Shown here: piece by piece, positions 3,840 to 59,857 of the stretch
How positions within the stretch are numbered: the first letter of the stretch is position 1
How the letters are laid out: every line of letters begins with the position of its first letter
Source: Malacoraja senta
Lineage: Eukaryota
Assembly: GCA_038087875.1 (NCBI GenBank)
Contig: JAXLNO010005255.1
Location: 1 to 64,000 of the forward strand
Direction: 5' to 3'
Length of the DNA: 64,000 nt
Made by a program: the position numbers and the translations under genes
Notes under the pieces: generated by a model
Told to the model about the DNA's origin: nothing
Database searches by the model: none
Seen by the model: the letters and a program-made list of their open reading frames with translations, nothing else

Positions 3840-4790
3840 CCCTCGCTCAGAGGACGTCAGGAAAGGCTTGGGAGTACAGATGAGTTTTTAGTCTAGACTT
3901 AAAGGAGTCGATGGAGGGGGCAGTTCTGATGGGAAGAGGGGATGCTGTTCCACAGTCTAGGAGTTGCAACCGCAAAGGCGCGGTCGCCCCTGAGCTTATG
4001 CCTAGATGTTCAGTAACCTCAAGTCGGCCGATCTGAGGGACCTGGAGGTGGTGTGGCAGGTGAGCAGACTTTTAATGTAGGTGGGGACAAGCCCATTGAG
4101 GGCTTTGTAGACACAAAGGAGGATCTTGAAATTTATACGGAACCGCACAGGGAGCCAGTGGAGAGAGGCCAGGATCGGGGTGATGTGGTCCCTTTTTCGG
4201 GTGCCAGTCAGGAGTCTCGCTGCGGCGTTTTGGACCAGTTGCAGGTGGGACAGGGAAGATTGACTGATGCCAGTGTAAAGGGAGTTGCAATAATCTAGGC
4301 GGGAGGAGATAAATGTGTGGATGATCTTTTCGAGGTCATCAAACTGGAGGAATTGTTTTATTTTAGCTATCGTCCGAAGCTGAAAGAAGATAGCTTTTAC
4401 CACGGCATTGATTTGTTTGTCAAATTTCAGTGCTGAGTCAAATATCATGCCAAGGTTTTTGACGTGAGGTTTGAGTCGTGGGGTAAGGCTTCCAAGGCTG
4501 CCTGCTATCATTTTGATTGAGTCCGAGGGGCCGAGAAAGATGACCTCAGGCTTATTCTCGTTTAGTTGGAGGAAGTTCTGGGCCATCCAACACTTTATAT
4601 CCTCGAGGCAGTGGATAAGGTTAAGCAGATTTGATTGGTTTTTGGGCTTCAGGGGGAGATAGAGTTGTGTATTCTCTGCGTAGCAATGGAAGGAAATGCC
4701 GTGTCTTTCAATGACTTGCCCTAAGGGGAGCATATACAGGGAGAAGAGAATGGGGCCAAGGATGGAACCTTGTGGAACCCCACAGCAGAG
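3840..4790 (-). mobile_element. L2 LINE 3' fragment (RT catalytic YADD mutated to YAEN)
   Basis: ORF 4002-4901: GVPQGSILGP, FISSRLDYCNSL, QNAAARLL, HITPILASLHWLPV. Confidence 0.92.
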
Positions 4791-4794
4791 ACTA

Positions 4795-5245
4795 GCTGAG
4801 ACTAGATTAGATATACAGCGTGGAAACAAGCCCTTCAGCCCACCGAGTCCGTGCCGACCAGCGATCTCGCACACTAACACTATTCTACACACTAGGGACA
4901 ATTTCCAATTTTACCAAAGCCAATTAATCTACAAACTTGTGTAAGAAGGAATTGCACATACTGGTTTAAACCAAAGATAGACATAAAAAGCTGGGGTAAC
5001 TCAGCGGGACAGGCAGCATCTCCGGAGAGAAGGAATGGGTGATGTTTTGGGTTGAGACCCTTCTTCAGACTTGTACAAACTTGTACGTCTTTGGAGTGTG
5101 TGAGGAAACCGGTGCACGCAGAGAGAACCTACGTAGGTCATGGGGAGAACGCACAAACTCTGTATTCCGTAAGGACAGCACCCGTAGTCAGGATCAAACC
5201 CGGGTCTCTAGCGCTATGAGGCAGCAACTCTACCGCTGCACCACC
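4795..5245 (-). mobile_element. HE1-type SINE with nested Penelope repeat
   Basis: Same core in reverse orientation. Further copies at about 14581-14850, 17250-17520, 21060-21250, 28260-28380, 39570-39860, 55075-55370, 56545-56850 and 56905-57195. Confidence 0.85.
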
Positions 5246-9796: not shown

Positions 9797-12700
9797 CTAC
9801 AAAGCAAAAAAACATGATGACAGATCAGGGAATCTGTGCTTCAGTATGAAAGTACTGTACGCTGGAGAGAAGATGGATTAGCTACAAACCAGACTTCAAA
9901 CATCCTGCTGATCATGGATTTCAGGACATTCTATTCAATTACATACAGCATTGATAACAAGCATTTTATCATGGAAAAGGTAGATGTTTTACAGAGGTAT
10001 AAGGGGAACATGGATCTCAAATGACAGCAGGAAATACTGGGAGCAACAGCTTTACTCCATGTAGCATCGTGGATGAGGAGAGAACATGCTTACTTACACA
10101 GGCTTGCTTTGTGGAAACTGACAAATTGTGAATAAAGTAGCCATGAAAAATAAACTTCTATTCTGGAAAGATAAAATGCTGGAGTTCACAAGATTGATCC
10201 CTGGGATGGCGGGACTGTCATATGGGGAAAGATTGAAAAGACTAGGCTTGTATTCACTGGAGTTTAGAAGGATGAGGGGGAATCTTATAGAAACATATAC
10301 AATTATAAAAGGACTGGACAAGCTAGATGCAGGAAAAATGTTCCCAATGTTGGGCGAGTCCAGAACCAGGGGCCACAGTCTTAGAATAAAGGGGGGGCGG
10401 ATCATTTAAGACTGAGGTCGGAAAAAACGTTTTCACCCAGACAGTTGTGAATTTATGGAATTCCCTGCCACAGAGGGCAGTGGAGGCCAAATCACTCGAT
10501 GGATTTAAGAAAGAGTTAGATAGAGCTCTAGGGGCTAGTGGAGTCAGGGGATATGGGAAGAAGGCAGGCACGGGTTATTAACCATATAACCATTACAGCA
10601 CGGAAACAGGCCATCTCGGCCCTTCAAGTCCGTGCCGAACATCATTTTTTTTAAATTAAAAAAAATAATAATAATACATCCCCCTAGTCCCATCTACCTG
10701 CACTCAGACCATAACCCTCCATTCCTTTCCCGTCCATATACCCATCCAATCTATTTTTAAAGGATAAAATCGAACCTGCCTCCACCACTTCCACTGGAAG
10801 CTCATTCCACACAGCTACCACTCTCTGAGTAAAGAAGTTCCCCCTAATGTTACCCCTAAACTTCTGTCCCTTAATTCTCAAGTCATGTCCCCTTGTTTGA
10901 ATCTTCCCTACTCTCAATGGAAAAAGCTTATCCACGTCAACTCTGTCTAACCCGCTCATAATTTTAAAGACCTCTATCAAGTCCCCTCTTAACCTTCTGC
11001 GCTCCAAAGAATAAAGCCCTAACTTGTTCAACCTTTCTCTGTAACTTAGTTGCTGAAACCCAGGCAACATTCTAGTAAATCTCCTCTGTACTCTCTCTAT
11101 TTTGTTGACATCCTTCCTATAATTAGGCGACCAAAATTGTACTCCATACTCCAGAATTGGCCTCACCAATGCCTTGTACAATTTTAAGATTACATCCCAA
11201 CTTCTATATTCAATGCTCTGATTTATAAAGGCCAGCACACCAAAAGCTTTCTTTACCACCCTATCTACATGAGATTCCACCTTCAGGGAACTATGCAGTT
11301 ATTCCTAGATCCCTCTGTTCAACTGCATTCCTCAATTCTCTACCATTTACCATGTACGTCCTATTTTGATTTGTCCTGCCGAGATGTAGTACCTCACATT
11401 TATCAGCATTAAACTCCATCTGCCATCTTTCAGCCCACTCTTCCAAATGGCCTAAATCTCTCTGTAGACTTTGAAAATCTACATTATTATCCACCACACC
11501 ACTTATCTTAGTATCATCTGCATACTTACTAATCCAATTTTCCACACCATCATCCAGATCATTGATGTACATGACAAACAACAGTGGACCCAACACAGAC
11601 CCCTGAGGCACCCCACTAGTCACCGGCCTCCAACCTGACAAACAGCCATCCACCATTACTCTCTGGCATCTCCCATTCAGCCACTGTTGAATCCATCTTG
11701 CTACTCCACCATTAATACCCAACAATTTAATCTTCTTAACCAACCTTCCATGAGGAACCTTGTCAAAGGCCTTACTGAAGTCCATATAGACAACATCCAC
11801 TGCTTTACCCTCATCAATTTCCCTAGTAACCTCTTCGAAAAATTCTAGAACATTAGTCAAACATGACCTTCCAGGCATAAATCCATGTTGACTGTTCCTA
11901 ATCAGACCCTGCTTATCCAGATGCTTATATATAATACCTCTAAGTATCCTTTCCATTAATTTGCCCACAACTGACGTCAAACTAACAGGTCTATAATTGC
12001 TAGGTTTACTCTTAGAACCCTTTTTAAACAACGGAACAACATGCGCAGTACGCCAATCCTCTGGCACTATTCCCGTTTTTAATGACATTTGAAATATTTC
12101 TGTCATAGCCCCTGCTATTTCTACACTAACTTCCCTCAACGTCCTCGGGAATATCCTGTCAGGACCTGGAGACTAATCCGTTTTCATATTTTTCAAAAGT
12201 GTCCGCACCTCCTCTTCTTTGAATCTCATAGTTTCCATTGCTACTCTGCTTGTTTCCCTTACCTCACATAATTCCATATCCTTCTCCTTGGTGAATACCG
12301 AAGAAAAGAAATTGTTCAATATCTCCCCCATCTCTTTTGGCTCTGCAGATAGCTGTCCACTCTGACTCTCTAATGGACCACTTTTATTCCTTGTTATCCT
12401 TTTGCTATTAATATAGCTGTAGAAACCCTTTGGATAGGGGACGATCAGCCATGATCAATAGGGGACGATCAGCCATGATCACAATGAATGGCGGTGCTGG
12501 CTCGAAGGGCTGTATGGCCTCCTCCTACACCTATTTTCAATGTTTCTATGGAGTAACTCAGTGGGTCGGCAGCATTCCTGGACCTGCCTGACCTGCTGAG
12601 TTACTCCAGCATTTTGTGTCTTTCCTTGGTAAACCAGCATCTGCAGGTTCTTGTTTCTACAATCTGTAATCTGGATTGGTTCAGCAAGTTTGAAACTTGT

Positions 12701-39869: not shown

Positions 39870-41493
39870 TTGTGCCACCCCTAAATATGTTCACTATTCT
39901 ATTGCAGAATCTCCAATCTCTCCCTCAATGTCAGCAAGGTGAATTTGAAGGAGGTAGTTATCGACTGTAAAAATATGATTCAACTGATGGATAACTCCGC
40001 CCAGCAAGTGGACTGGATTGTAATGGAGAAAGAGGATTGCTCCTCTAGAAACATTGGAGCGATCCTCCTTTCTCCAATGAAATTGAATAACATAAATTAT
40101 AATAAGAACCCAATTATTCATAGTACAATCCGAATTTGGAAACAAATAAAACAAAATTTAAAATTAAGAAATTTATCACTTTTATTACCTATAGTTAATA
40201 ACCCTTCGTTTAATCCCTCTATTATAGATAAAGCTTTTACACATTGGGATAGACTAGGAATTAAAACGCTTGGTGACTTGTATGAAACTGGAAAATTACT
40301 TTCATTTCAACAATTACAAATAAAATATAAACTCGGAAATAATCAATATTTTAAATATTTTCAAATATGCGACTATTTGAAAAAATATACAAAAGATCAT
40401 TATAATAACCCAGTAGATGTATTGGACGAGGCAATGCAAATAAAAGCTGAATCAGCAAACTTAATATCATATTTGTATAATATTATCTTAAATGTACAAA
40501 TACCATCTACGGAGGGTATCAGAAGAGACTGGGAACAAGAGTTAGCTATTAAAATTTCAAAGGAAAGTTGGAATGAACACTTATTAAACGTGCATAAATG
40601 CTCGATTAATGTAAGACACACTTTAATACAATTTAAAATTTTACATAGATTATATTATTCGAAAACTAAAATTCATAAAATTTTCCCAAATGTTTCATCT
40701 ATTTGTGATAAATGTCAATCCCAAGAAGCTACTATAGCGCACTCATTCGTTTTCTGTACAAAAATTCAAAAATTTTGGAATTAAATTTTTGAAATCTTTA
40801 CAAAGTTATTTAAAACAAGACTGATACCCAAAGCAGAATGGATTATCTTCGGAATAACGGAAGGTGGTCCAGAACTAAATGTGTTTCAAAAGAAACTAAT
40901 GGACTATGTGTTAATAACTGGAAAAAAGCTAATTCTAAAATTTTGGAAGAAGGCTCCAATACCAACTATAAATATGTGGATTTCAAATATGTTTGAAACA
41001 TTACACCTAGAAGAGATAAGACTCCTCATAGCAGGTAAACCAGATCACTTCCACCTGACGTGGTCTGCATTTATAGAATTATTACAAATATAGGGTGCAA
41101 AAGTACTTAAAAAAAAAAAAAATTGAGGTCAGGTAAGGGGGGATGATAGTTGAAGAGTTGGTATGTCCCATTTACGTAATGCTCATAAAAATATTTGTTT
41201 CTCTCTTTTTCCTCTTTCTCTTTCTCTTTCTTTTCTAGGGTCTATTCCTTAACTCTTTTTCTTTTGTTTTTAATTTTGCTCTTATAGGGTCTTCGTCCTT
41301 TTTTGTTGTCACATTTTCTACACTTTCACTTTTTCCTTCACTTTCTTCTTTCTTTTAATCTTTTCTTTTTCTAGTGTAAAAAATAAATGGAGTACATTAA
41401 TTGTAAGAAGATATAAATGACGAGTACTAATGTATGTGGTTGTAATGTAATGTACTTCTAATAAATTAAAATAAAAAAAATAATAATAAAAAA
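39870..41493 (+). mobile_element. Second 5'-truncated L1/Tx1-clade LINE of a related family, disrupted
   Basis: ORFs 39939-40784 and 40881-41093 are homologous to the 28677 ORF. A-rich tail at about 41460-41493. Confidence 0.88.
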
Positions 41494-44127: not shown

Positions 44128-44179
44128 ATGCTTCTTTTTACCTTACTCAACACTTACGGTGTGGCCACTGTCTCGTCTG
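44128..44179 (+). CDS. MHC class I-like leader exon (MLLFTLLNTYGVATVSS)
   Basis: ATG, then 17 signal-peptide-like codons, then G|gtaagc. The phase-1 donor joins alpha1 as G+AT = Asp. Intron 1 would be 8.5 kb and contain the DIRS element. Confidence 0.75.
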
Positions 44180-47100
44180 GTAAGCAATGCTCTTTCTACT
44201 TGTGAACTTTGGGGAAACAACAAAACTGATTCTATTTACTGTTGCACAGTCCCTGTGTTTGCCCTGGGTTCATTGTCTTGGATGTATTAATTGAATGATT
44301 GAATTGAATGTATTAATAATTTTGGGTAACGGTCATTCCTGAGTTGTGAAGGTTCCTGTGAGGTTATATATACTATGGTTACCTTGGTAATCCATTGAAG
44401 AGAAGAACTGAATACATGTAAATAATGAACATAGAGCATAGTACAATACAGCATAGGAGCAGGACCTTCAGTCCTTCAGTCTGAAGAAGGGTCTCGACCC
44501 AAAACGTCACCCATTCCTTTTCTCCAGAGATGCTGCCTGACCCGCTGTTACCTCAGCATTTTGTGTCTACCTTCGGCCCACAATGTCTGTGCCGAACAAA
44601 ATAGTAAGATTAAACGAGAACTTACCAGTTTGAAGTTTGATCTGTATTTTATGAGGAGTTACGATGAGGGATTACGTGAAGACCCCGTTCAGCACGCATG
44701 CGCGACATTCTTCAAAGCAGCGGTGTGGAATCACAGGAAACACAATAATAGAAATAAACATAGTAAAGAAAAGGAGAACTAAGATACCTGTTGATCTATA
44801 TATTTGAGGGTGGGAGCAGAGGGCACGTAATCCCTCATCGTAACTCCTCATAAAATACAGATCAAACTTCAAACTGGTAAGTTCTCGTTTAATCTTACTA
44901 TTTTACTTCGGAGTCACGTGAGTGACTACGTGAAGACTTCAAAGCTCTGTGATTTCAAACCGTGTAACAGTTCATACTTCACTCGCTGCCGAAGTCATTC
45001 AAGGGAGGAAGTATGTTATCGTAATCAACCATAATCTGTTTGTAAACAATAATGGTATCTATTAAACAATAACAAAAGACAAAATGCTCCCCCGGGCTTA
45101 AATTATATATTTTTGCAGATTTTAAAACTCTTTCTGCAAATAACACAGGTTCTGCTAGCGGCTTGTGGTAGAACGTTTGGAACGTTTTCTCCATGTTCAT
45201 TCTTTTAGCCGCCGATGTGGATGCTGCCCTGGTGGAGTGAGATGTATATACATCAGTATCTACTCCAGCAGCTCCCAGTACCTGCTTGAGCCATCTCGAG
45301 ATGGTTTGGCTCGACACCCAACCATGAGGTTTCTTGTGGCTGACCCATAAGGCTTTTTTTTATTATTTATTTATTTATTTATTTATTATTATTATTATTT
45401 TTTTTCCCCTTCTCCCTCGAGAATCTCTTGTTGTGTTGATGTAAGTGAATAAGTGAGTCATGTCACACAACCGTAGGTCAGGTGGGTATGCCCGGAAATC
45501 CATAACTAGGACTCAAGTACCTGGCTTGCTCTGCTTTAGCAGCTCCTGAATGGTGAATGAGACCCGGTCTGGTGTTATAACCATGTTGTCCAGTCGCAGT
45601 AAGTGGAGGGACTGGACTCTTTGTGCTGAGACTAGTAGCATCAGCATGACCATTTTCAGGGTTAGCTTTTCCAGGGTGAGAGACCTGGCTGGGGACCATC
45701 CCCTTAGGTATGTCAGGATCACACTGACATCCCAGATTTGTGTATACCTAGGTCTAAGAGGGTTGGAGTTGACGATACTCCTCATGAGTTTGATCACCAG
45801 CGGGTGAGACCCTATGGCCTGTTGTCCTGGCACCTGTTTTAAGTAGGCTGACAGCGCACGTCTGGCAGTATTGATGGCGCTGTAGCTCAATCCTTCATTA
45901 TGGTGAAGGCCCCGCAGGAACTCCAGTACATTGGTTATGGTTGCAGATGAGTACGTTGTCCCAGTAGTCGAGCAGTATCTTTCCCACTTCCTGATGCTCG
46001 ATAGGTATTGTTTCCTGGTGGACATACGGTGTCATCATGTTGATGGTCCTGTCAGACAATCCCAGTCCCAGCAGTGGTCTTTTGATAATCTGCAACCCAG
46101 TAGGTTAATTTTGGCATGGCATGGATGCCTTATGCCTGATACAGGGTGCGTCAATAGGTCTGGGCTACTGGGAAAGGTCATAGGAGTTTCGATGACCATG
46201 TCGAGGACCACTGGGAATCATGGCTGTGTAGGCCAGTTTGTACTATCAAAATACCTGAAGCAGAGTCCATCTGTATTTTGCGTAGTACCCTACAGATTAA
46301 GGCAGAAGGGGAAAAAGCATAGAAGAAATCTGTCTCCCAGTTCAGCACGAATGCATCTATCGCTGCTGCCTCAGGGTGTGGTTCCCAAGGGACATACATT
46401 GGTACGTGGTGATTTAGTCTGGATGCAAAGAGATCGATATCTGGTGTGCCATATTGGTTTGTAATTTTAGCAAAGCTCTAGGATTTAACATCCATTCGGT
46501 GTTTATCATTGAATTTGCATGACCTGGCACTGTATTTAGCTTACCTGGTAGGTAAGTTGCTGATAGCCAAATATGTCTATCGACCCACCATTACCAGATT
46601 GTGTTGACCCAATTGTCACATGATATCGATTTTATTCCGGCCATATGGTTAATATAGGCCACCACCGTGATATTATCAATTTGTAAATGAACATGCAAGT
46701 TGTGCATATTCCTAGAATATGCTTTAAAACCATAAAATGCACCCAACATTCCCAAATAATTTATGCCCAGTGTTTGTAGTAAAGACGAGTCTAGGTTAGT
46801 CCATCTACCACCTGTGCTGGATATGGTATTAGTTGCTCCCCAGCCTTGAGCACTGGCATCTGTTTGTATAGTTAACGTTGGGTTATTGATGATGATAGGG
46901 CTGGAACTATGCCAAATGTGTTATATCCACCATTGTAACTCTGATATTGCTTCAATGGGTAGTTTCATGGATCTGTCAAAGTGACCTGCATGTCGTTTCA
47001 ACGCCTGTACTTTTGCCCTTTGTAGGTGCTGATAGTGCAGGAGTCCAAATTGTGTAGCTGAAAATGCTGCTACCATTTTGCCAATTACTCTTGCCACTTG

Positions 47101-50100
47101 TCGGATGGTTGGTCGATTGCTTACCATTAAATTGTTGCACATCTGTGCCAATTCTGCTGCTTTACCTTTTGGCAACGTTACAGACATGTGGATTGAGTTA
47201 ATTGAATCCCAGATAGTCCATAGTTGTGGATGGCGTCAACTTGGATTTATCTGGATGTATGACAAACCCAGGGTTTCAACAATTATTTGGTAGCTAATAC
47301 AGCTGATTTAGCCAACTCCATGGTTTTGCCAACTATTAGGATATCATCAAGATACGCCATGACAATATGTCTTTGTTTCGCTAATGTTGCCAAGGCTGGT
47401 TTTAATATCTTGGTAAATAGTCTAAGGCTGTAAATTTTCAGGTATCTGCGATGACCCTTGTGAATGGGTACTGAATAGTAGGCATCTTTTAATTCAATGC
47501 TTGCCATAAAGTATCCTTTGGAAATCAGTTGTTTAGTAGTTACAAATGTTTCCATTTTGAAATGTACATACTTAACAAAGGTATTTAGTGAGGTTAAGTC
47601 AATGATGATGCGACATCCACCATCTTTTTTACTTTTGGTAAATATATTTGAGACAAATTCCAAAGGATCATGTTTAGATTTCTCAATGACACCCTTTGTA
47701 AGTAACCTCACCAGTTCTGCTTGAGCCTCTAGTTCTCTTTGACTGAGAGGGTAAAGACCCTTTGGGTACGTGCTGAACTGGTGGCATGTTTTCGAAGGAA
47801 CTCTATTTTGTATCCCCGAATACTGTTAAGTATATAACTATCATTCGTGAGACACCTTCTGTTAGTACAGTTCCCCATTTACATGCTGGTAGGAACCAGA
47901 CCCACCTACCTCCATATTTATGGTAGTGTTCCTTTCTTCCGTTTGTTCATCCGTCGTTATACTGCTGGATGTACTGCTGATGTACTGCTGATTGGGGGTG
48001 GCGCATTTTCCATGGGGTCCGCTCTGGGCCCTGGCCTAAAAAGGCTTTCGGGGATAGTATGCGGACCCCGAGCTTTCACCAGTGACATAAATTTGACCTT
48101 GACTGGTGGACGCGGTGGGGTACTGCCGTCTGGTTTTTTGTGTGGGTCTGCTCGTTCCGGGGCCTGCCCTCATGAGGCCAAATGCTTTGGACTCCTCCTC
48201 CAGGTCTTTCACTTGTCCTTCCAATAACAGGATCTGCGGCTCTGAGGCCGGTGTTTTACACAGTCCTGCAAACCTGGGATTGAGGGCAGGTCTTATTCTC
48301 TCCTTGCGGAGGTTATTTATCTCATATTGGGTGTAGCACAGCAGAGCCAGAGTGTCTTGCTGGTTTGTGGTCATATCCACCCCATCCACGGAACGAGCAT
48401 AGGCTGTTATCCCTGTCGTCAGGAGCTTGAGGATTTTAGCTCCTGGTTCCGGATACTCTGTCCCCCCCCCCAGATTTGGCTGTTAACAGCCGGTACATTG
48501 AGCGAACTGCAGTTTTCCAGCTCTAGTGCCTCATTAAGTACCTGTCTTGTAGGGGTTTGAGGGACAGGTGGTTGATGCTGGCCGCCAGTTTTGGCTCCAA
48601 TGGCCGCCCTGCTCGTGGTGAAACCACGTAGCGAATCTCCACACCCAGCAGCTCTTCCTGATCCTGTACCCCAAGCGTACTCCCGACATCTTCAGCCAAT
48701 GACCCCTCTTCCTGACCAGCCCAGCCCTGGTCGCCAACGCTGCCCTGCTTTGAGGGGAAAGCGATGGCCAGTGCATTGTAGAGCACTGCTGTGGGAGTGC
48801 CTGATCCCCCTGGCGAGACTGCTCTAGCTCCTGAAGCAAGTCTCGCTGGAGCAGTTGCTCCATGAGCCTTTCCATTCGGCTCAGGCGGCTAGCTCTGCCG
48901 CTCTAAGGCGGACCCTCCTCATCGGAGTCAGACATAACCGGCCGGTTTGTTTGTTTGTTTTTTTTTTAAAACTTTTCCTCCAGCCCGCTGCCGCTCATCA
49001 GGCTGCGCTAGCGGGACTGGGCTCGGCTCGGTCTCGATGAGGGTGGACCGCCGCATATGCGGTCCAGGTGCCGCCTCTCGCCCCCCACTGATGGAAAACT
49101 CCCGTTCTGTTGGAGTCGGACGGGGGGCGGTTTTCTTCCTTTGCCGTGCTGCTCCTGTTCCCAGTTCCTCTGGAATAGAGAGCAGAGCAGAGCACAGCTT
49201 GCGGATTACGACCTCAGAGTAAGACTTACCTGAAGGTCCGCTGTTTATTTTCACCGACTTGTAGCGGGAGCGCCTGTACTCCCGGTCGTCGCTGTTGCAC
49301 TGCGTGAACGCTAATGTTGCGCATGCGTGCTGAACGGGGTCTTCACGTAGTCACTCACGTGACTCCGAAGTAAAATAAACTAATCTCCTCTACCTGTATG
49401 TGATCTGTATCTGGCCATTCCCTGCCTAACTATGTACCTATCCAAAAGCCTCTGAAATGTAACTGTTATATCTGCCACCATCACCACAACCACCACTGGC
49501 AGCGCGTTACAGATGTCCACCACCCTCCACATAAAACAACTTGCTCCGCTCATCTCCTTTGAACATTGCTTCTCCAACCTTAAAGTGATGTTCTCTGGTC
49601 TTCAACATTTCCACCCTGTGAAAAAGGTTCTGGCTGTCCACTCTGTCTGTGCCTCTCACCATGTTATGCACTTTCATCAGGTCTCCCTTCAACCTCCAGT
49701 ATACAAGAGAAAACAATCCATGTTTGTCCAATCTGTCCTTGCACTAATGCCTCAGACAGAATTCAGGTAAACCGGTGATGTGCACTTTCAATAAAGAAGT
49801 GACTTCTGCATTAGTAGGTGTCCCACCTCTCCAAGATTTCCTCAGCTGGTGTTAGGCACCCACATGATGGTAAAATTCAGCCTGCATTAAATGACCAATC
49901 AATGTTGTGTTAATGTTGTTGCCATCTTGTTGTTTGTTGCATGCTTCCTGTCCTGCAGACCCTATCCATTACCCCACCACCACTTCCCCAGAAGACAATA
50001 ATGAGATTTAAGACGCTTGAGGATAGGCACGTGGATATGCAGGGAATTGAGGGATATGAATCATGTACAAGCATGAAGAGTTTAGTTTAACTTGACATCA

Positions 50101-53100
50101 TGATCGGCACAGACATTGTGGCCGAACTCCAGCCCATTACACCCTTAATGAACAAAAATCTATCAATCTCAATCTGGAAATTTGCAAGTGGGCAAGATGT
50201 TCAACAGATTACAGAATCGAGAACCAGAGGACATAGGTTTAAATTGAGGGGGGAAAGATTTAATGGGAATCTGATGAGCAATTTCTTCCCACACAATGGT
50301 ACCTTTCTAACTATTCTGACATTCGTCAAGGCTTAGAGATTACAAACCTGTAATCGGATGCTCGTCCTGAAAGTTTAATCCCATTCCTATCAGATGGAAG
50401 TAAATATAATGGTGATGGCCGTGTTGAAATAATAACATATAAAACAAAACTCCTTGGCTGTGGAGTGTTTTGCGAAGCCACATGGATTTTATCCTTACTA
50501 TTCCACTCTTAGCCTTCTTATGTTTCTCCTGGTAACACTGAAACAGACACTTCTAACTCTGCCCTCGGGGCCCCTTCTCACTTCACTTAAACACATGAAC
50601 TTTGACACTGTCTGGTGTGCTGCATGTAATCTTTATCACAGAACAAATACTGCTTGTTCGTGTGGAAACAAGAAACTGCACATGCTGGTTAATACACATA
50701 AAATACTGGAGTAATTCAGCAGGTCAGGCAGTATGTCTGGAGAACATGGTTAGGTGATGTTTCAGTTGAGACAAGTGTAGGAAGGAATGCAGATGTGTAA
50801 GAAGGAACTGCAGAAGCTGATTTAAACCGAAGATAGACAATAAAGCTGGAGTAACTCAGCGGTACAGGCAGCATCCCTAGAGAGAAGGAATGGGTGACGT
50901 TTCGGGTCGAGACCCTTCTTCTGACTGCTGATGCAGATGCTGGTTTACACCGAAGATAGATACAAAAGGCTGGAGTAACTCAGCAAGTCAGGCAGCATCG
51001 CTGGAGAAAAGGAATAGGTGGAGTTTCAGGTCAAGACACTGCATCAGACAGAGTCGGGGGTGCATATATTTCATTGTACTTTTTCATATCTCTCGGTTCT
51101 CTGTCCCCTGACTCTCATTCTGAAGAAGGGTCTCGACACGAAACGTCACCTTTTCCTTTTCTCTGTAGATGCTGCCTGACCCACTGAGTTACTCCAGTAT
51201 TTAGGCCCTGTTTATTACAGTCTCCACCCTCCACCTCCACCCTCCCCCCCATGGTTATTTCCTATGGTTATTCCAGTTTCCCCGCACGTCCCAAAAATGG
51301 CGGGCTGAAAGGTAAGTTGGCCAGTGTGAATTGATCATGCATATGTATTAGAATTGGTGGAGGGGATGAGGGAGGTGTTAATGGGAGATTGGCAAATATT
51401 AAATGGGTTAGCGTACTACAAGTACAAATAGGTGTTTGATGGTTACCACGAACTTGGTGGGCTAAAGGGCCTTTTAATGTGCTGTACCCAGAGGACATAA
51501 GTTTAAGATGAGGGGGGAATGATTTAATAGGAACCTGAGGCGTAGCTGTGTTACACAAAAGGTGGTGGGTGTACTGAATGAACTGCCGGAGAAGGTACTT
51601 CAGGCACGTACTGTCACGACATTTAAGAAACATTTAATCAGGTACATGGATAGGATAGGCTTATAAGGATATGGGCCTCAGTCAGCTGTAGAGCCCATGT
51701 CAATCGATATTTCTCAGGTGGAGATTAACAGATTCTTGATCAATACAGGTTTCAAGGGTTATGGGGTGCAGGCAGGAGAATGTGGTTGATAGGGAGAGAT
51801 AGATCAGCCATGATTGAATGGCCGATGGGCTGACTGGCCTAATTATTCTCCTAGACCTTATTTACTGATGAAATACAGGCAGTGTAGATGGGGCATGTTG
51901 GTTGGTGTGGCAAGTTGAGCCATAGGCCCTGATTCCCTGCTGTATGACTCTTTGACTTTACCTCTCTATGATTCTATAAAGTCTCCTTGACATTGTCCAG
52001 TTTCTTAATATAATAAAATATTCTTCAAATTTTGGAATATTGTAACTAGTAGAACCTATCGACATGATAGACAATAATAGATCTTTGAAGATGGGAAACA
52101 ATCCAATACGATCATTCAATACCTCGACCATAATTGGTGGAGTAGGTATCAGAGCCCATCATGCCAACTCTTGACGAAGGCTCAGTGGTGCAGCAGTAGA
52201 CTTGCTCCCTTATCTCGATTACAGCACCATAGACCCAGGTTGGATCCTGATTACGGATGCTGTCTGTACGGAGTTTGTCCATTCTCCCCATTACCGTGTG
52301 GGTTTTTTCCCGAGATGTTCGGATTCTTCCCACATTCCAAAGACGTACAGGTTTGTAGGTTAATTGGCTTGGTGTAGAATGTAAATTGTCCCTAGTGTGT
52401 GTAGGATAGTGTTATTGTGTGGGGGTTGCTGGTCAGTGTGGACTCAGTGGCCCGAAGGGCCTGTTTCCATGCTGTATCTCTAAGCTAAAAACTAAACTAA
52501 AGGCTCCTGACCCAAATTGTCACCTGATCATTGATGCTGCCTGCCCCACTGAGTTCATCCAGCACTTCCATCTGCAGGTCCTTGTGACTCCCTTATTCAA
52601 AGTTATTGTATTGTTATCAGTTTTAGCATTAATAACTTAGTTATTTTCAGTGAATGATACAATCATACTTATTTTTGTTTATGCATTGCAGATTTACACC
52701 ATCTTGCATTTTACTACCTGTTGAACCATGGATTGAATGAGCTGCCTGAGTACAGTATGGTAGCAATGCTGGATGACCTCCAGATAGCATATTTTGACAG
52801 CACACTAGAGCGGGCTGTTCCCAGACAGCGATGGATGGCCCAGTCTTTCCCGCAGGATCAATGGGATTCAATGGCCATCACAGTTGCAGGTTTTCATGGG
52901 ATTGTCAGAGGAAATGCTGAGATAGTCTACCAACAGCAACATGGTATCTCGAGTAAGTGTCGTGACCGGACCTGGGGTAGACACCCAGTGATGGCACAAA
53001 TGGATTTTGTTTTAGTTTTGTTGCTGTCACATGATTCTCTGATACACTTTTTTTGCATGTTAGTCAATCACATCAAAGAAAACTATTCATAAATACAATC

Positions 53101-56100
53101 AAACCAAACTCGTACAATAGGTAGAGCAAAGAGTGCAGAATGTAGTTCTCAGCATTGTAATGTACCAGTGCCAGAGAGACAAAGTCCAGTGTCTACAATG
53201 GGGTTGAGGTGAACCCTAGCATAAGGGAGGACTGTTCAGAAACCTGATAACATAGGGGAGGAAACAGTTACTGAGTCTGGTGGTGCACGCTTTAATGCTT
53301 ACGTACCTTCTGCAGGAAGAAGAAGGAATGACCAGAGCGGGATGAATCTTTGATTATGTTGTCTGCTTTCCTGAGCCAGTTGAAATACAGATGGATTCAC
53401 TGGTGGGGAATCATGTTTGTGTGATCGATTGTGCTACATCTCCACCTCCCTGCCATTTCCAGCGGTATTGGGCAGAACTCTTTCCAAACTAAGTTGTGAT
53501 GCAACCTGTCAGTGTGCTTTCTATGGCACATTTGTAGAAGTTTGTAACAGTCATTGGAGATGCCGCATTTCCTTAGTCTCCTGAGGCAGTAGGGGAACCA
53601 GAAACTCTCAACCTTTTTCACTTCAGCACCATTGATGCTGTTTCAGACATTTACTCCATCACATTTTGATAGAGACACGGCCCATCGTCTATATTTAATG
53701 TGTCCTAACTGCTGAACACCCATTGACAACAGTTGGCTGGTGATAGTCTCTTTATGGGTTAAGCATTTGATATTTAACACCAGTAAAAAGTGGATGGATT
53801 GGATCATCTGTTTTATTGGGCTGGAATGAGGGAGAAACCATAGTTTATTTATAGCCTGATCACCTAGAGATGGGACCTTGATTAAGCTGGTTGATGGTGA
53901 CTATGATGTATTCCCTCAACAATAATATTCTGTTAATCCAGCATTCCCTCAATATTGGCAACAATCCACAGAGAGTGTAGCAATCCCACACAGTGCAACA
54001 GCCTGATGTACTTCCCATCTGCATTGCCTTAACCTTCAGACTGACCTGTTCACTGTATAACATTGCCCATCTGACAATGCACTCCTTCCTCTGTTCTTTA
54101 TGTACGAAAGTGCAGAATCTGAGTTCTACCCTTCTGACACAGCAAAACTTCTTTAGTGTTACATCCGCAACAGTAAAGCTTCCCCCCTCAACACTTGAGG
54201 TTAGTCCATGCCCTCAGTATATAGACCATGGGTCATTGAGTCACACATCATGGAAACCGGCCCTTCTGCTCACTGAATCCACATTGATCATCATTTGTAC
54301 TAAGATGGAGTCACAGCAAACTGCAGATGCTGCCAATCTGAATTAAAAACAAACAGGAGGAACTCAACGAGTCAGGCAGCATGCTGTGGAAAAATGGACA
54401 GAAAACATATGAGACCAGGACCATTTAGAGTGATGGAGTAGGGTGGAGAAAGCTGGAAAATAAAAGTAGTCTGTGTAGGATACTGTTAATGTGCGGGGAT
54501 CACTGGTCAGTGCGGACTAGGTGGGCCGAAGGGCCTCTTTCCGCGCTGTATCTCTGAGCTAAACCTGCTCCTATGCTGTACAGCTCCATGTTGTGTTCTG
54601 TTATGCCTGTTTGTACCATGCTGAGAACTGATTTGTAAATTGCCTCTCCCTTCCATCCACTCTCCCCAACACAAATCCTCCACCCCTACCTCAGCCCCAG
54701 CTGTTTGCTTTGTGCAGGGTTTCTGCGGCTGTGAAGTGGACAGTGACAATTCCACTGATGGGTTTGTCAGACTGGGTTATGATGGGGAGGATGCCTGTGC
54801 TTTTGACAAGGACAGAATGCGCTGGATTGCACTACGTCCAGATTTCCAGATGCTAGCAGATCGGTGGAACGTCAACACCTTCATGAACAAGTATTTTAAA
54901 GATCTCCTGGAGAAGGACTGTGTGAAGTGGCTGCGGATATATCTGGAGTGTGGACAAGAAGCACTACAGAGGAGAGGTACACGACGTAGGCACTCTGACT
55001 GATGGGCCAGAGGATATCCTCTGGATAGATCAGGTGGGAAATATCATGCACTTCAGGCTGTCACTTGAGTAATTATTTAGTTTAGTTTAGTGATACAGCG
55101 CGGAAACCCACCGAGACCGCACCGACCAGCCATGCCCGCACACTAACACTATCCTACACACACTAGGGACAATTTGCATTTATACCAATCCAATTAACCT
55201 ACAAATTTGTACGTCTTTCGAGTGTGAGGGGAAACCGAAGATCTCGGATAAAACCCATGCAGGTCACAGGGAGAACGTACAAACTCTGTAAAGACAAGCA
55301 CCCGTAGGTAGTAACAAACCCAGGTCTCTGGCGCTGTAAGGCAGTAGCTCGACCGCTTCGCCACCCTGTTCTACGATGTGGGTATCAGTAAATTGTCTGG
55401 CAACGTGCCTCTTAGATGGAGCCAGTGGGTAGGAAGTGCAAGTGAAAGATAAATATTGTACCAGTGTCCTCTATCCACAGTCATATAGATATTCAGGAAA
55501 TGGAGGGATATGTATCTTGGTCTTATGTTTAGCATTGACCTTGTGCCTGAAGTGTCTGTTGCTGCGCTGATCAGAAACCCAATCAGATTCTCTATTTGCC
55601 TCTATTACTCCTTGGGATGGTGACATCCAATTTCCAACAGTTCTCTGGTTGAAGAACTTCTTCCTCCCATTCCCTCTTGGAATATTTAGTGTTATTATTC
55701 AGCTGAGATTCATGAACAAGTAGAAGCAATCATGTCTACAGTATCAATCCCAATGGTGAGTTATACTCCTCCATTGGGCCTGCATTCCCCTTACATCTGC
55801 GCTGTCAGTTCAAGTCTGGAGCTAAGATAAGGAGCATGTCAGTGATATTAAAACTAAATGTTTTGTTGTTTTGCCAGAAATGCAAAATGAAAAGAGAAAA
55901 GGCTGTAAACTTTGTGCAAGATAGAACTGCAGATGCTGGTTTACACTGAAGATAGAAGATGTTGGAGTAACTCAGTGGGTCAGATAGCATCTCTGGCCTT
56001 CTCTCCAGAGATGCTGCCTGACCTGCTGAGTTATTCCAGCATTTTGGGTCTAGGCTGGAAACTTTGTTCAGCTGGAGAAAAAACTGATTGGGAAAGAGGT

Positions 56101-59100
56101 GAGTTGCAGTGATCTTACAATTGAAGGCTTTTGTTCATGTCTTCACTGATTCTGACGCTTCCTACACTTGCAGAAACCCCTGAGGTGTTTATTGGGATTA
56201 AACGTGATGGGTCACAATCACTGAGACTCTCCTGCCTTGTCACAGGCTTCTACCCACGGGCCATCGATGTAACGTGGCTGAGAGATGGTGAGGGAGACCA
56301 CGAGTCTGAATCCAGTGATCTGTTGCCCAATTGGGATGGGACTTACCAGCTGAAGAATACAATTCAACTGAGTAGAGAAGATGTGGCAAAATTCTCCTGT
56401 TACATTGAACATGCAACTCTGCTGCAGGGAGTCAATGTTCCACAGGGTAAGTGGCAAGTCAATGAGGCTGATCACTTGAGAGAATAAACCTCCTGGACTG
56501 AGATAACAGCCTCAACACACTCTTAACTAAGCTGTGCATTTAGATTTTAGACTTTAGAGATATGGTGCAGATACAGGCCCCTCAGCTCAATGAGTCCTCG
56601 CTGAACAGTGATCATCCCGTACATTTACACTAACCAACACACTGGGGACAATTTACAATTTTACCTAAGCCAAGTAACCTTCAAGCCTGTATGCCTTTGG
56701 AGTGTGGGAGGAAACCGGAGCACCCGGAGAAAACCCACGCAGTCACAGGGAGAACATACAATGTCCTTGCAGACAGCACCTGTAGTCAGGATCAAACCCA
56801 GGTCTCTGGTGCAGTAAGGCAGCAGCTCTACCGCTACGCCACTGTGCCACCCATTATTAATTTGTGGTTATCTAATTGCCCAGAATTATTGATAGTCAAT
56901 GGAATGTGGTTTAATTTAAGAGATACAGCACAGAAACCGGCCCTTTGGCCCACGAGTCTGCGTCAACCAGCGATCCCTGCACACTTACATTATCTTACTT
57001 ATTAGAGACAATTTACAATTATACCAAGCCAATTAACCTACAAACCTGTATGTCTTTGGACTGAGGGAGGAAACCGGAGATCCAGGCAAAACCCACGCAG
57101 GTCCGGGGGAGAAGGTACAAAACTCTGTACAGATGGGACCCGTAGTTAGAATTGAACCGGGTCTCTGGCGCTGTAAGGCAGCAGTTCCACTAAGTGGGCA
57201 AAGCAGAGCCAAATGGAATACAGTGTAGCAAGTGTCTGGTTTTACATTTTGGCAGTCGGAATAAAGACATAGACTATTTACTAAATGGGGAGAGAATTCA
57301 GAAATCTGAGCTACAAAGTGGGAGTAGTAGTGCAGGATTCCCAAATAGTTCATTTGCAGATTGAGTCAGTGGTAAGTAAGGCAAATGCAATGCCAGCATT
57401 CATTTCGGGGGGACTAGAATATAAAAACAATGATATAATGCTGAGGATTTATCGGGCACTGGTGAAGACACATTTGGAATATTGTGAGCAGTTTTGGGCT
57501 CCATATTAGAAAGGATGTGCTGGCTTTGGAGAGGGTCCAGAGGAAGTATGTCCTGGGGATGATTGATTTAACGTATGAGGAACGTTTGAAGTCTCTGGGC
57601 TTCTACTCGTGGGAATTTAGAAGGATGAGGGGAAAATCTCTGAAACCTACCAGTTAATGAAAGTCCCAGTTAGTGGATGTGGATAGGATGTTTTCAGTAA
57701 TGGGAGAGTCTAGCACAGCCTCACAATGAAAATACGTACTTTCAAAATGGAGATGAGGAGGAATTTCTTTAGTCACAGGGTGGTGAATCTGTGGAATTCA
57801 TTGATACAGACAGCTGTGTGGGTCAAGTCATTGCATATTTTAAAGCAGAGAATGATAGGTTCTTGATTAGTACGGGTGCCAAAAGTTACAGGGAGAAGGC
57901 TGGAGAATGGGATTCAGAGGTAAAAATAGATCTGCCATGACTGAATGGTGGAGTAGACTCAATGGACTGAAAGGCCAACTTCTGCTCCAATGGTAAAAAT
58001 TATTCTTATGTCACCCTTAACTCACACATCCAAATGTAGGAAGCAAGATAGGCTGATCCTGGCCAAGGTCTCTTATCTTATTTCTTGGGCATCTAGCTAA
58101 TTTTTTAATAGTAGTTAGTTGCACAAAAGGCCAATAGTGGTGCCACATCCAACCCCATTATCAGGCTGAAGTAGCAGCACCTGTTCTGTAGCTGACTTAT
58201 TTGTTCCAGTCAAGACCTCTGCAAATATCTTCACACCAGGGCCAAGCTGACATGGTTAAAATTGCTGGTCAGTACAAATAGACAGTAGTGTTAATGTCTG
58301 AGTGTGCGTGTGTGTGTGTGTGTGTGCGCTCATGCGTGTGAGACAGAGAGAGGGGGAGGGGGAGGGAGAGAAAGAGAGTGTGTGTGTGTGAGAATATCAA
58401 ACTCTCAGATATTGAAATATCAGCAAAGTTTAAAACCTTTGAAGTTTTATCAACTATAAATGGGTTCACTTTTATTTGCTAAAATAACAATGGTCAACAT
58501 AAGAAAATAGCCTTGTTGACCTCTACACTGCAAATTGACCACCAGGGGGCGCTGACCTGTGTGCGGCTACCCAGCCAGCAGCTGTCTGTCCTTTCACCTT
58601 TATTTTTTATTTTAGTCAGTAAAGTGTTTTGTTTTGGAGGTCTAGACTTTTTTGTGTGTGGGGGGGGGGGAGGGGGAAACTACCTTTCAGGGTCCCTACC
58701 TGGCTGGAGAGGCAGCTTTTCTCCGGGCTGCAGCTTCGACCCGTCCTCGCGGCCTACCAGTGGGCCTGGAGCGGCGTTTCCTGTCGGGGACCGCCCAGAG
58801 CCTCGGCTTCGGCACAGCGCTGGAGCGCTATCGCGGAGCGGGCGGTGCCTTGCCCGGGTCGCCGCGCTGGAGCTCCGGTGAGCTGAGGATCGCTGGAGAA
58901 AACATCGCGGAGCTGCGGGACTGTGGAGCGACCAGCTGAACTTTACACCGGGAGCCTGGGATCTCTAGATGAGAGCGCCAGTTGTGGAGCTCCAACCGGC
59001 GCGGCCTTGTTGGCTTCGGAAGCCGCGGCCCCCAGTGCGGAAGCGGCCGTTCCAGGGTTCCGAGGCCGCTGGGAGGACTCTCCCGACGCTGGAGCAACAT

Positions 59101-59857
59101 CACCCGGCGAGAACGGCCTGGAACATCGGGCCTCCGTAGAGGCAACTGTGGAGGCCTCAATGGGCCCGACTATGGGTGAACTGGGGTTGGGGACTGGACT
59201 TTGTGCCTTCCCTCATGGTGGGACCCATTGTGGGGGGGTGTTCAGTGTTAAGACTATCTTGGTGTTGTGTCTGTATTCTCTCTCTTTTTTGTGTGCTGCA
59301 TAATGGCAAAAAGCATTTCACTTCACTACACCCGGGTGTATGTGAATGTGACAAATAAAATATCTTGAATCTTGAATCTTTATTTATGACATATGTTTGA
59401 TTCTTTAAATTCATAATTAAATGCTGCAGATAAAATCTCAACGCTAATATGAACTTCAAAGATTTTTCATTGATCTATTTAAACATCCATCGTCTGGACA
59501 ATTACATAAATCTAAGACTTTGTTACTTTTTATTTAGATGTGAACAATGCTAGTTTAATGTAGATAATAAAATCATTTCAAAGTCATAATTGATCAATAA
59601 ATGTTTAAAATGAACTATATATGCCAACAGAGATGGCAGCGAAAGAAGATATAAAGATTAGGATCGTGACTGGAGCTGTAATCGTTCCTCTCTTTCTCCT
59701 GGGGATCATCCTTGGAATTGGTTGCTGGAAGAAGAGGAAAAAGATAAAACCTTTCAATGAACAGGGACCAGCTGACAACAGCAGAGACCAGGAGACGACT
59801 GCAGTGACCATGAAGCACAATCAACTTCCATTGGGATGCAGAGGTCTACCGGAATGA
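44128..59857 (+). CDS. Non-classical MHC class I-like heavy chain gene (leader, alpha1, alpha2, alpha3, TM/cytoplasmic)
   Basis: Five exons joined by phase-1 introns, as is standard for class I genes. The alpha1/alpha2 motifs (FDS...P...W, QxxxGCE, YDGED, CVKWLRIYLE) and the IgC1 alpha3 (LSCLVTGFYPRAIDVTW, DGTYQL, FSCYIEH) are present. The lineage cannot be assigned without an alignment. Confidence 0.95.
44598..49377 (-). mobile_element. DIRS1-type tyrosine-recombinase retrotransposon, structurally full-length, ORFs decayed
   Basis: Left ITR about 49270-49377. Right ITR about 44598-44710, with inverted match 44676-44704 to 49319-49348. The ICR at about 44826-44938 is complementary to both outer ends. 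Fragments of gag, RT (MAYLDDILI), RNase H, methyltransferase-like (DAFVLNW...YAFSP) and YR (HSTRAAS). No TSD. Confidence 0.95.
52175..52500 (+). mobile_element. HE1-type V-SINE (tRNA-derived head, CR1-type tail), near full length
   Basis: tRNA-like head (ggtgcagcagtaga...ggttggatcctga), core tgctgtctgtacggagtttgt...ggtttgtaggttaattggc, and tail gggcctgtttcc...ctaaactaa. Confidence 0.85.
52692..52952 (+). CDS. MHC class I-like alpha1 exon (DLHHLAFYYLLNHGLNELPEYSMVAMLDDLQIAYFDS...YQQQHGIS)
   Basis: Acceptor ttgcag|AT and donor A|gtaagt. 261 nt, open reading frame. Confidence 0.93.
53050..53650 (-). mobile_element. Rex1/L2-like LINE 3' fragment in MHC intron 2
   Basis: LRRLRKCGIS and a degenerate ESILT.CIT.W region. 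Confidence 0.6.
54701..54976 (+). CDS. MHC class I-like alpha2 exon (VCFVQGFCGCEVDSDNST...LEKDCVKWLRIYLECGQEALQRR)
   Basis: Acceptor ccccag|CT and donor G|gtacac. 276 nt. Canonical C101/C164 equivalents are present. Confidence 0.95.
56174..56446 (+). CDS. MHC class I-like alpha3 (IgC1) exon
   Basis: Acceptor cttgcag|AA and donor G|gtaagt. 273 nt. Both IgC1 cysteines, FYP, W and DGTYQ are present. Confidence 0.96.
57260..57995 (+). mobile_element. Degenerate CR1 3' fragment in MHC intron 4
   Basis: YRALVKTHLEYCEQFWAPY motif and CR1 tail. Confidence 0.8.
58300..58390. repeat. (TG)n/(GA)n microsatellite cluster
   Basis: Directly visible. Confidence 0.9.
58530..59370 (+). repeat. Unclassified GC-rich interspersed repeat (related element at ~41494-42130)
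   Basis: T-rich start, GC-rich body and LINE-like ...tgacaa(a)taaa tail. No coding potential. Confidence 0.45.
58536..58554 (+). promoter_or_regulatory. CTCF motif
   Basis: TGACCACCAGGGGGCGCTG preceded by CTGCA (upstream-motif-like). Confidence 0.6.
59631..59857 (+). CDS. MHC class I-like TM + cytoplasmic exon (single exon)
   Basis: Acceptor ccaacag|AG (phase 1, weak pyrimidine tract). Hydrophobic IVTGAVIVPLFLLGIILGIGCW, then stop-transfer KKRKK, tail and TGA. Confidence 0.8.

What the first reader, a model, noticed from the sequence alone, without database searches (positions are those of the whole stretch)
54701..54976. Four extra cysteines in alpha2, with none in alpha1
Seen: besides canonical C101/C164, there are Cys at about 93 (replacing the conserved His), 99, 124 and 174. 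In classical structures 99 and 124 lie on or near the groove floor, 93 faces beta2m and 174 is at the helix end. Inference: novel disulfides, covalent homodimer or beta2m linkage, or free thiols that capture a ligand covalently (conceptually like the MR1 Schiff base). I do not recall this pattern in described class I lineages.
Basis: partly seen in the sequence, partly recalled or inferred. Interest (0 to 1): 0.72.

Follow-up and report, generated by a model that had tools for sequence, protein, structure and literature searches.

The report
Extra cysteines in skate MHC-like gene
A skate gene for an MHC class I-like surface protein does carry four extra cysteines in its alpha2 domain, but they arose one at a time, each where relatives have a bulky greasy residue, so they are most likely unpaired thiols, and only the groove-floor Cys99, kept in every shark and ray, looks functionally important.

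Summary
The exon 54701-54976 is a 92-codon class I alpha2 exon with Cys at HLA-type positions 93, 99, 101, 124, 164 and 174. Alpha1 has none.

The gene is intact, with five exons. It belongs to a clade of 13 shark and ray orthologues that is sister to UGA, the shark non-classical lineage solved as PDB 9ch4. Alpha2 is under strong purifying selection (dN/dS 0.10-0.17 in deep comparisons), so this is not a decaying gene.

The four cysteines have four different ages:
- **C99:** present in all 13 orthologues, with synonymous TGC/TGT turnover.
- **C174:** present in 9 of 13.
- **C124:** present only in the five batoids.
- **C93:** present only in this window (TTC to TGC).

Each sits where relatives have Phe, Tyr or an aliphatic residue. 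No two were gained together, and most species carry an odd number. Canonical class I strand topology places every pair beyond disulfide reach.

New internal disulfides are therefore unlikely. Unpaired thiols are the best reading, with C99 resembling the free Cys12 on the floor of CD1d's A' pocket. Covalent ligand capture remains untested.

Earlier notes of this scan had already placed other copies in this genome as UGA-sister genes.

The parts
44128..44179 (+). Leader exon (MLLFTLLNTYGVATVSS plus the first base of the next codon), followed by a gtaagc donor
   Evidence: the ATG is at 44128 and the peptide resembles the leaders of the Pristiophorus and Heptranchias orthologues. The phase-1 donor joins AT at 52692 to give Asp.
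52692..52943 (+). Alpha1 exon, 84 codons, no cysteine
   Evidence: 94% amino-acid identity to L. erinacea P0001. Pfam MHC_I gives E = 1.4e-5, below the gathering score on its own.
54701..54976 (+). Alpha2 exon, 92 codons, six cysteines
   Evidence: The splice sites are conserved in Leucoraja, Pristis, Heptranchias and Stegostoma.
54706..54708 (+). Cys93 codon TGC, private to this copy (TTC = Phe in all relatives examined at DNA level)
54724..54726 (+). Cys99 codon TGC, first Cys of the invariant C-G-C motif. Present in all 13 orthologues (TGC in batoids, TGT in the two sharks read). Phe in UGA, mostly Tyr elsewhere.
54730..54732 (+). Canonical Cys101
54796..54798 (+). Cys124 codon TGT, batoid-specific (TAT or TTT in sharks)
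   Evidence: 0 of 271 other class I domains.
54919..54921 (+). Canonical Cys164
   Evidence: This codon is TGA in the L. erinacea pseudogene L002.
54949..54951 (+). Cys174 codon TGT, last residue of the alpha2 helix. Present in 9 of 13 orthologues; Ala, Phe or Tyr in four sharks.
56174..56446 (+). Alpha3 (C1-set Ig) exon with the two canonical cysteines
59631..59857 (+). Connecting peptide, transmembrane and cytoplasmic exon, ending in TGA. It contains a membrane-edge Cys (GIGCWKK) where non-skate relatives have Phe.
   Evidence: alignment.

Best explanation
This is an intact, selectively maintained non-classical MHC class I gene of a skate. It belongs to an old single-copy shark and ray lineage that is sister to UGA. 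Its four extra alpha2 cysteines are not a designed set. They accumulated stepwise: C99 on the stem of the lineage, C174 early with later losses, C124 in the batoid ancestor, and C93 in this copy alone. C93, and C124 against the shark residues, are single second-position changes of a Phe or Tyr codon (TTY or TAY to TGY); the same route would fit C99 and C174. They most likely exist as unpaired thiols acting as small hydrophobic residues that enlarge or line cavities. C99, with the invariant Gly97 and Gly100, would form the floor of the left-central part of a groove that has lost peptide anchors. It would sit next to the canonical C101-C164 bond, as free Cys12 sits at the base of CD1d's A' pocket. 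Gene structure, conservation pattern and selection are shown. Burial, redox state and ligand type are inferred.
For: - **Intact gene:** five exons with conserved splice sites.
- **Lineage:** the clade of 13 has SH-aLRT 100 and mirrors the batoid/shark split. It is sister to the UGA clade at 99. UGA identity was checked: P0238 matches 9ch4 at E = 6.7e-170, and the entry is titled UGA.
- **Selection:** alpha2 dN/dS is 0.10-0.17 at dS 0.65-1.6, and C99 is kept through a synonymous TGC/TGT change.
- **No paired gains:** the per-site states differ in age. Batoids other than this copy carry three extras. Heptranchias and Mustelus carry only C99 and have no alpha1 Cys.
- **Hydrophobic positions:** relatives have Phe, Tyr or an aliphatic residue at all four sites.
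- **Structure:** the AF2 model of the Pristis orthologue (pLDDT 91; TM 0.92 to 9ch4) places 93, 99 and 101 on one strand, 124 two strands away, and 174 at the helix end.
- **Precedents:** Cys99 is tolerated in teleost and squamate class I genes. CD1d Cys12 is a free thiol at the base of the pocket (PMC13312407).
Against: - No coordinates were returned, so no SG-SG distance or solvent exposure was measured. The geometry rests on recalled HLA-A2 pocket lists and strand parity.
- Four free thiols in an extracellular domain is unusual.
- This copy has an even number of extras, which in principle allows two new bonds.
- The strict invariance of C99, next to a variable residue 98, suggests more than a space-filling role.
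- Window versus L. erinacea dN/dS is only 0.47 in the ectodomain, and earlier notes of this scan report dead copies in this genome, so this copy may be under relaxed constraint.
- C93 could not be checked against reads.
Confidence: 0.6

Rival explanations
1. C99 is a chemically active residue. Its thiol would bind a ligand covalently (thio-Michael or hemithioacetal adduct with an electrophilic lipid or metabolite, or a mixed disulfide), in the way Lys43 of MR1 forms a Schiff base.
For: C99 is invariant in 13 species at saturated dS with a synonymous codon change. It occupies a groove-floor position that helps form pockets A, B and D in HLA-A2 (established knowledge). Synthetic chloroacetamide ligands do bond CD1d Cys12 (PMC13312407).
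Against: No natural covalent ligand of a class I thiol is known to me, and other electrophile designs aimed at CD1d Cys12 gave no adduct (same paper). Cys99 appears sporadically in unrelated class I genes. The sister lineage UGA has Phe there, which fits a purely steric role. Nothing here tests reactivity.
Confidence: 0.1
2. One or more extra cysteines form intermolecular disulfides. C174 at the helix end could make a homodimer like HLA-G Cys42 or HLA-B27 Cys67, or C124 on the underside could link to beta2m or another partner.
For: C174 is the last helix residue, so it may be partly exposed. It is kept in 9 of 13 species. Dimer-forming unpaired cysteines are known in class I and have been proposed for teleost lineages (PMC4364491).
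Against: The replacements at 174 are Phe, Tyr, Ala, Ile and Val, as expected for a packed hydrophobic site, and four sharks lack the Cys. Position 124 is Ile, Leu or Phe in 250 of 271 other domains, typical of a buried core residue. Batoid beta2m was not examined.
Confidence: 0.1
3. The extra cysteines form new intradomain disulfides, or the C-G-C motif allows shuffling between C99-C164 and C101-C164 as a redox switch of the groove.
For: This copy has an even number of extras (four). C99 and C101 lie on the same face of the same strand below the helix that carries C164. The CXC motif is known as a redox-active motif (my own knowledge).
Against: The gains were staggered and other species carry odd counts. 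By canonical topology the pairs 93-99, 93-124, 99-124 and every pair with 174 are roughly 14 A or more apart or on opposite sheet faces (inference). Residues i and i+2 on a regular strand are too far apart for an unstrained bond. C101 and C164 are both strictly kept.
Confidence: 0.05
4. For C93 only: it is a neutral or mildly harmful private change, a polymorphism or a base-call error, in a copy drifting under relaxed constraint.
For: TTC occurs in every relative read, including both L. erinacea copies. A single T to G change explains it. dN/dS against L. erinacea is 0.47. L. erinacea has a dead duplicate, and earlier notes of this scan report dead copies in this genome (unchecked).
Against: The gene has no stop, frameshift or splice defect. 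Alpha2 is its best-conserved exon (dN/dS 0.31 against L. erinacea).
Confidence: 0.5

Closest known systems
UGA, shark non-classical MHC class I (PDB 9ch4, released 2026-03-18). A 2025 review reports, as a personal communication, that UFA and UGA are CD1-like and lipid-binding (PMC12562908).
   Same: It is the sister clade (SH-aLRT 99) and the best structural match to the model (TM 0.92, Z 29.4, 38% identity). The two share motifs (LNHG, VPRQ.WMA, AGFHG, MN.YFK.LLE.DC), lie on the same contig or chromosome in Heptranchias and Pristis, and have both lost peptide anchors.
   Different: UGA has His93, Phe99, Phe/Leu124 and Ile/Val/Leu/Phe174, so none of the four cysteines. It is a separate clade in both sharks and rays, so the split predates the elasmobranch radiation. 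Whether the present lineage is the UFA named in the literature could not be settled.
[quoted passage not shown]
   Same: An unpaired cysteine on a floor strand of a hydrophobic, non-peptide groove in a class I-like molecule. It is reachable by ligands and can be alkylated by designed electrophilic lipids (PMC13312407).
   Different: CD1d Cys12 is on the first alpha1 strand, whereas C99 is on the first alpha2 strand. There is no orthology: CD1b (P0233) falls far away in the tree. Lipid binding by the present lineage has not been shown.
MR1 (Lys43 Schiff base). NCBI names the orthologues 'MR1-like'.
   Same: Among mammalian molecules it gives the best sequence and fold similarity after UGA.
   Different: The chemistry and the position differ (a lysine in alpha1). 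The orthologues do not group with tetrapod sequences in the tree. The 'MR1-like' label is automatic annotation.
Teleost S, P and U lineage class I molecules with extra cysteines; HLA-G Cys42 and HLA-B27 Cys67
   Same: Lineage-specific extra cysteines in class I domains, discussed as sheet-to-helix bonds or dimer formers (PMC4364491). Cavefish S-lineage genes carry an extra alpha2 Cys at about position 100.
   Different: Those are mostly in alpha1 and in part occur as conserved pairs (C36/C67). Here all the extras are in alpha2, are unpaired by their history, and sit at other positions.

Membership tests
MHC class I heavy chain (fold and gene structure) | Alpha1/alpha2 MHC_I platform plus a C1-set alpha3 domain, one domain per phase-1 exon, with C101-C164 and the alpha3 cysteine pair | tested here: met
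   Pfam MHC_I and C1-set. Exon phases and lengths are 252, 276 and 273 nt. The canonical cysteines are present. The orthologue model matches class I structures at Z 27-29.
Classical peptide-presenting class I | The invariant residues that bind the peptide termini: Y7, Y59, Y84, T143, K146, W147, Y159, Y171 | tested here: not met
   Counting by hand from W60, W133, W147 and C164 in the translation, against my recalled HLA-A2 sequence, gives F7, Q59, L143, R146, W147, L159 and Y171. Position 84 is ambiguous because alpha1 is 6 residues shorter. At least three anchors are lost.
Elasmobranch UGA-sister lineage (unnamed in the papers I could read; possibly UFA) | Membership of the clade of single-copy shark and ray orthologues annotated as MR1-like | tested here: met
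   The window protein groups with L. erinacea P0001 (support 100), then the batoids (96), then all 13 (100). Identity to the members is 54-92%.
Elasmobranch UGA-sister lineage | C-G-C at positions 99-101 (proposed here as a hallmark of the lineage) | tested here: met
   Present in 13 of 13 members and in the pseudogene L002, and absent from 14 of 14 UGA sequences.
UGA (PDB 9ch4) | Membership of the clade that contains the crystallised protein | tested here: not met
   It forms a separate clade with support 100, and both clades hold sharks and rays. Identity to 9ch4 is only 38%.
UFA (named only in PMC10751288 and PMC12562908) | CD1-like groove, single or low copy number, location in the class Ib cluster with UDA and UEA | not testable with these tools
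No UFA reference sequence or structure was available.
CD1-like lipid presenter (functional class) | Demonstrated lipid in a deep hydrophobic groove | not testable with these tools
   The only support is indirect: loss of anchors and kinship to UGA, whose lipid binding is reported as a personal communication (PMC12562908).
Disulfide-bonded extra cysteine pair (as teleost P/U C36-C67) | Two cysteines that co-occur across the lineage and lie within bonding distance | tested here: not met
   There is no co-occurring pair: the gains have four different depths and most species have odd counts. Distance was not measured and was judged only from topology.

The most novel reading that the evidence does not exclude
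The Cys99 thiol, kept in every shark and ray orthologue and sitting on the groove floor beside the C101-C164 bond, is the working part of the molecule. It would either capture thiol-reactive (electrophilic or oxidised) lipids or metabolites covalently for display, as a cysteine counterpart of MR1's Lys43, or act with C101 and C164 as a redox switch that gates ligand loading.
Probability: 0.08. Interest if true: 0.85.

Novelty: new member of a known kind. Interest (0 to 1): 0.38.

Why it matters
Cartilaginous fish are the oldest living animals with an MHC. The reported lipid-binding lineages UFA and UGA bear on whether non-peptide presentation is as old as peptide presentation. This work shows that the sister lineage of UGA has kept one unpaired groove-floor cysteine in every shark and ray examined, across synonymous divergence that is saturated. 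That gives a specific, mutable residue to test when its ligand is sought. It also shows that the striking four-cysteine pattern of this skate copy is a historical pile-up rather than a new disulfide architecture, which keeps effort from going to the wrong hypothesis.

Tried and rejected
1. **SG-SG distances.** Structure prediction returns no coordinates and writes no model file to /data.
2. **Window's own protein.** The spliced protein has no single reference, so I modelled the Pristis orthologue (F93, C99, C124, C174) instead.
3. **Reads.** Splicing, expression and the G at 54707 therefore have no read support. The look-up of sequencing runs found holders with at most 0.74 of the sampled words.
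4. **Pseudogene drift.** Rejected: the gene is intact and alpha2 has low dN/dS.
5. **Frame error.** The TM-exon dN/dS of 1.99 came from a wrong reading frame. The corrected value is 0.53.
6. **Lineage name.** The two Almeida et al. J Immunol papers are not held, and the MBE supplement has no UFA or UGA gene table.
7. **Other class I copies.** A tblastn search of the 64 kb found no other class I exons.
8. **Neighbouring ORFs.** The large ORFs tested are retroelement remnants or gave no Pfam match.
9. **More skates.** No other skate orthologues were found in the protein collection.

Full report
**What is there.** The stretch 54701-54976 is a 276-nt phase-1 exon. Read from 54700, it encodes 92 residues beginning AVCFVQGFCGCEV. 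Pfam places it in the second half of the MHC_I model at E = 2e-16. Cysteines fall at alpha2 indices 3, 9, 11, 33, 74 and 84, which are HLA-type positions 93, 99, 101, 124, 164 and 174. The canonical pair keeps its 63-residue spacing.

The gene around it is complete:
- Leader exon 44128-44179.
- Alpha1 exon 52692-52943, 84 codons, no Cys.
- Alpha2 exon 54701-54976.
- Alpha3 exon 56174-56446.
- One exon for connecting peptide, membrane span and tail, 59631-59857, ending in TGA.

There is no stop or frameshift. The rest of the window holds no second class I gene. The large ORFs I tested are reverse-transcriptase remnants or gave no Pfam match.

**Which gene it is.** A HMMER scan of 1.84 billion representatives with alpha2 gave one close hit, Leucoraja erinacea P0001 at 95% identity. 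Nothing else exceeded 44% apart from a fragment, P0019.

A word-index search with P0001 then found one orthologue each in Pristis, Mobula, Hypanus, Pristiophorus, Heptranchias, Scyliorhinus, Stegostoma, Hemiscyllium, Mustelus, Cetorhinus and Chiloscyllium, at 54-72% identity. All are auto-named 'MR1-like'.

In a maximum-likelihood tree of 59 class I proteins, the window protein and these 12 form one clade (SH-aLRT 100) whose branching follows the batoid/shark split. Its sister, at support 99, is a clade of 14 sequences. I identified that clade as UGA: its Stegostoma member matches PDB 9ch4 at E = 6.7e-170, and 9ch4 is titled 'shark nonclassical MHC class I, UGA'.

An AlphaFold2 model of the Pristis orthologue has mean pLDDT 91 and matches 9ch4 best, at TM 0.92 and Z 29.4.

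The two lineages share a contig of 530 kb in Heptranchias and a chromosome in Pristis.

The only published words I could find on these genes are that UFA and UGA are CD1-like, MHC-linked and single- or low-copy, and that crystal and mass-spectrometry data suggest lipid binding. This comes from PMC10751288 and from a personal communication in PMC12562908. Whether the present lineage is UFA could not be settled. Earlier notes of this scan (unchecked) call copies on other pieces of this genome 'UGA-sister' and assign UFA to another gene.

**History of each cysteine**.

| Position | This lineage | UGA and other class I |
|---|---|---|
| 99 | Cys in all 13 orthologues and in the L. erinacea pseudogene; TGC in batoids, TGT in the two sharks read at DNA level | Phe in all 14 UGA; mostly Tyr elsewhere |
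| 174 | Cys in the five batoids and four sharks; Ala (Heptranchias), Tyr (Mustelus), Phe (Hemiscyllium, Chiloscyllium) | Ile, Val, Leu or Phe in UGA; mostly Tyr elsewhere |
| 124 | Cys (TGT) only in the five batoids; Tyr (TAT) or Phe (TTT) in sharks | Phe or Leu in UGA; no Cys in 271 other class I domains |
| 93 | Cys (TGC) only in this window; TTC = Phe in the intact L. erinacea copy, its pseudogene, Pristis, Heptranchias and Stegostoma | His in UGA |

On the tree this reads as four separate gains at four depths, plus at least three losses of C174. Each site holds Phe, Tyr or an aliphatic residue in relatives. C93, and C124 against the shark codons, are single second-position codon changes.

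**Selection.** The gene is not decaying. In deep pairwise comparisons (dS 0.65-1.6), alpha2 has dN/dS of 0.10-0.17, the lowest of the three domains. The splice sites of the exon are identical in position in all five species.

Against L. erinacea the ectodomain gives dN/dS of 0.47 on few changes, and the last exon gives 0.53. The value of 1.99 was my frame error.

L. erinacea also carries a dead duplicate, L002. Its codon 164 is TGA, its acceptor AG has become CG, and its donor GT has become GC.

**What the cysteines probably do.** A new disulfide needs two partners. No two extras were gained together. Batoids other than this copy have three extras. Heptranchias and Mustelus have C99 as their only extra ectodomain cysteine, with none in alpha1. 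So C99 has been unpaired within the chain, at least in those species and presumably in the common ancestor.

The model's secondary structure puts 93, 99 and 101 on the first alpha2 strand, 124 on the third strand, and 174 as the last residue of the long helix.

From the established HLA-A2 pocket lists, I infer the following:
- Positions 95, 116 and 123 lie in pocket F; 97 and 114 in pocket E; 99 in pockets A, B and D; 171 in pocket A.
- The odd positions 93 to 101 face the groove, and 124 faces away from it.
- Position 93 is about six residues along the strand from 99.
- Position 124 is two strands and about three residues from either 93 or 99.
- Position 174 lies beyond the far left end of the platform.

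On that reasoning none of these pairs can bond. The i/i+2 pair 99/101 on a regular strand would be strained, and C101 is already bonded to C164.

The replacement spectrum (Phe, Tyr, Ile, Leu, Val) points to packed or pocket-lining sites. A Cys at such a site acts as a small hydrophobic residue and enlarges a cavity.

The best-conserved one, C99, lies between the invariant Gly97 and Gly100. It would form the floor of the left-central groove of a molecule that has lost at least three peptide-terminus anchors (Q59, L143, L159, counted by hand).

The nearest functional precedent is CD1d. [quoted passage not shown] That cysteine can be alkylated by designed chloroacetamide lipids, though other electrophile designs gave no adduct (PMC13312407).

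Cys99 is not unique to this lineage. It recurs in 8 of about 240 other class I domains, from Gadus, Pangasianodon, Carassius, Lampris and three squamates. Extra cysteines are a recognised theme in teleost non-classical lineages (PMC4364491).

- New internal disulfides: unlikely.
- Homodimer or beta2m link: not excluded, but the hydrophobic replacement pattern argues against exposed, reactive positions.
- Free thiols: the best reading.
- Covalent ligand capture by C99: the most interesting reading still open. I put it near 8-10%.

**Limits.**
- The species of the window is unknown. It is a skate, about 96% identical in DNA to L. erinacea at this locus.
- It could be an orthologue from another skate or a divergent paralogue.
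- Other copies in this genome, reported in earlier notes, were not available to me.
- No expression evidence was obtained.

Noticed in passing
L002:11688-12040 (Leucoraja erinacea scaffold JAMYXN010000412.1): A second L. erinacea copy of this gene is a pseudogene. The codon for the canonical Cys164 is TGA, the alpha2 acceptor AG has become CG and the donor GT has become GC. It still has F93, C99, C101, C124 and C174. NCBI models it as protein P0019.
   Followed up: partly
L001:10001-22177 (L. erinacea JAMYXN010000384.1), protein P0001: The NCBI model of the intact L. erinacea orthologue appears to read into introns after alpha1 ('ILTP') and after alpha2 ('GTRPRHSDWWNG'), and it lacks the leader. 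With the splice sites conserved in five species, these segments drop out.
   Followed up: partly
window 54745-54753 (N-S-T in the hairpin after Cys101): An N-glycosylation sequon in the motif DNSTDG is present in nearly all orthologues (NTT in Mustelus). The classical N86 sequon at the end of alpha1 is absent (the exon ends VYQQQH). The glycan site seems to have moved to the alpha2 hairpin in this lineage.
   Followed up: no
window 59631-59857 (last exon): At the membrane edge both skate sequences have GIGCWKK where all other orthologues have GIGFW. This is another Phe-to-Cys change and a possible palmitoylation site. There is also a Cys near the C-terminus (LGCRG).
   Followed up: no
window 44180-52691: Intron 1 is about 8.5 kb long, and the gene spans 15.7 kb. 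Upstream DNA carries reverse-transcriptase ORFs (4002-4901, 11291-12139 on the minus strand) and a zf-RVT ORF (39939-40784).
   Followed up: partly
UGA proteins P0238 and P0237, and PDB 9ch4: The crystallised UGA protein has two alpha1 cysteines (LDGCEIYY on a strand and WERCTMTE in the helix), and Stegostoma P0238 shares both; neither is present in the window's lineage. Pristiophorus P0028 has only the first. This may be a sheet-to-helix bond in alpha1 of some UGA proteins.
   Followed up: no
contig columns: The present lineage and UGA lie on the same 529,794-bp contig in Heptranchias perlo and on the same 19.9-Mb chromosome in Pristis pectinata, which carries three UGA-like genes (P0243, P0246, P0247). 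In several sharks they also share a chromosome with the other class I genes.
   Followed up: partly
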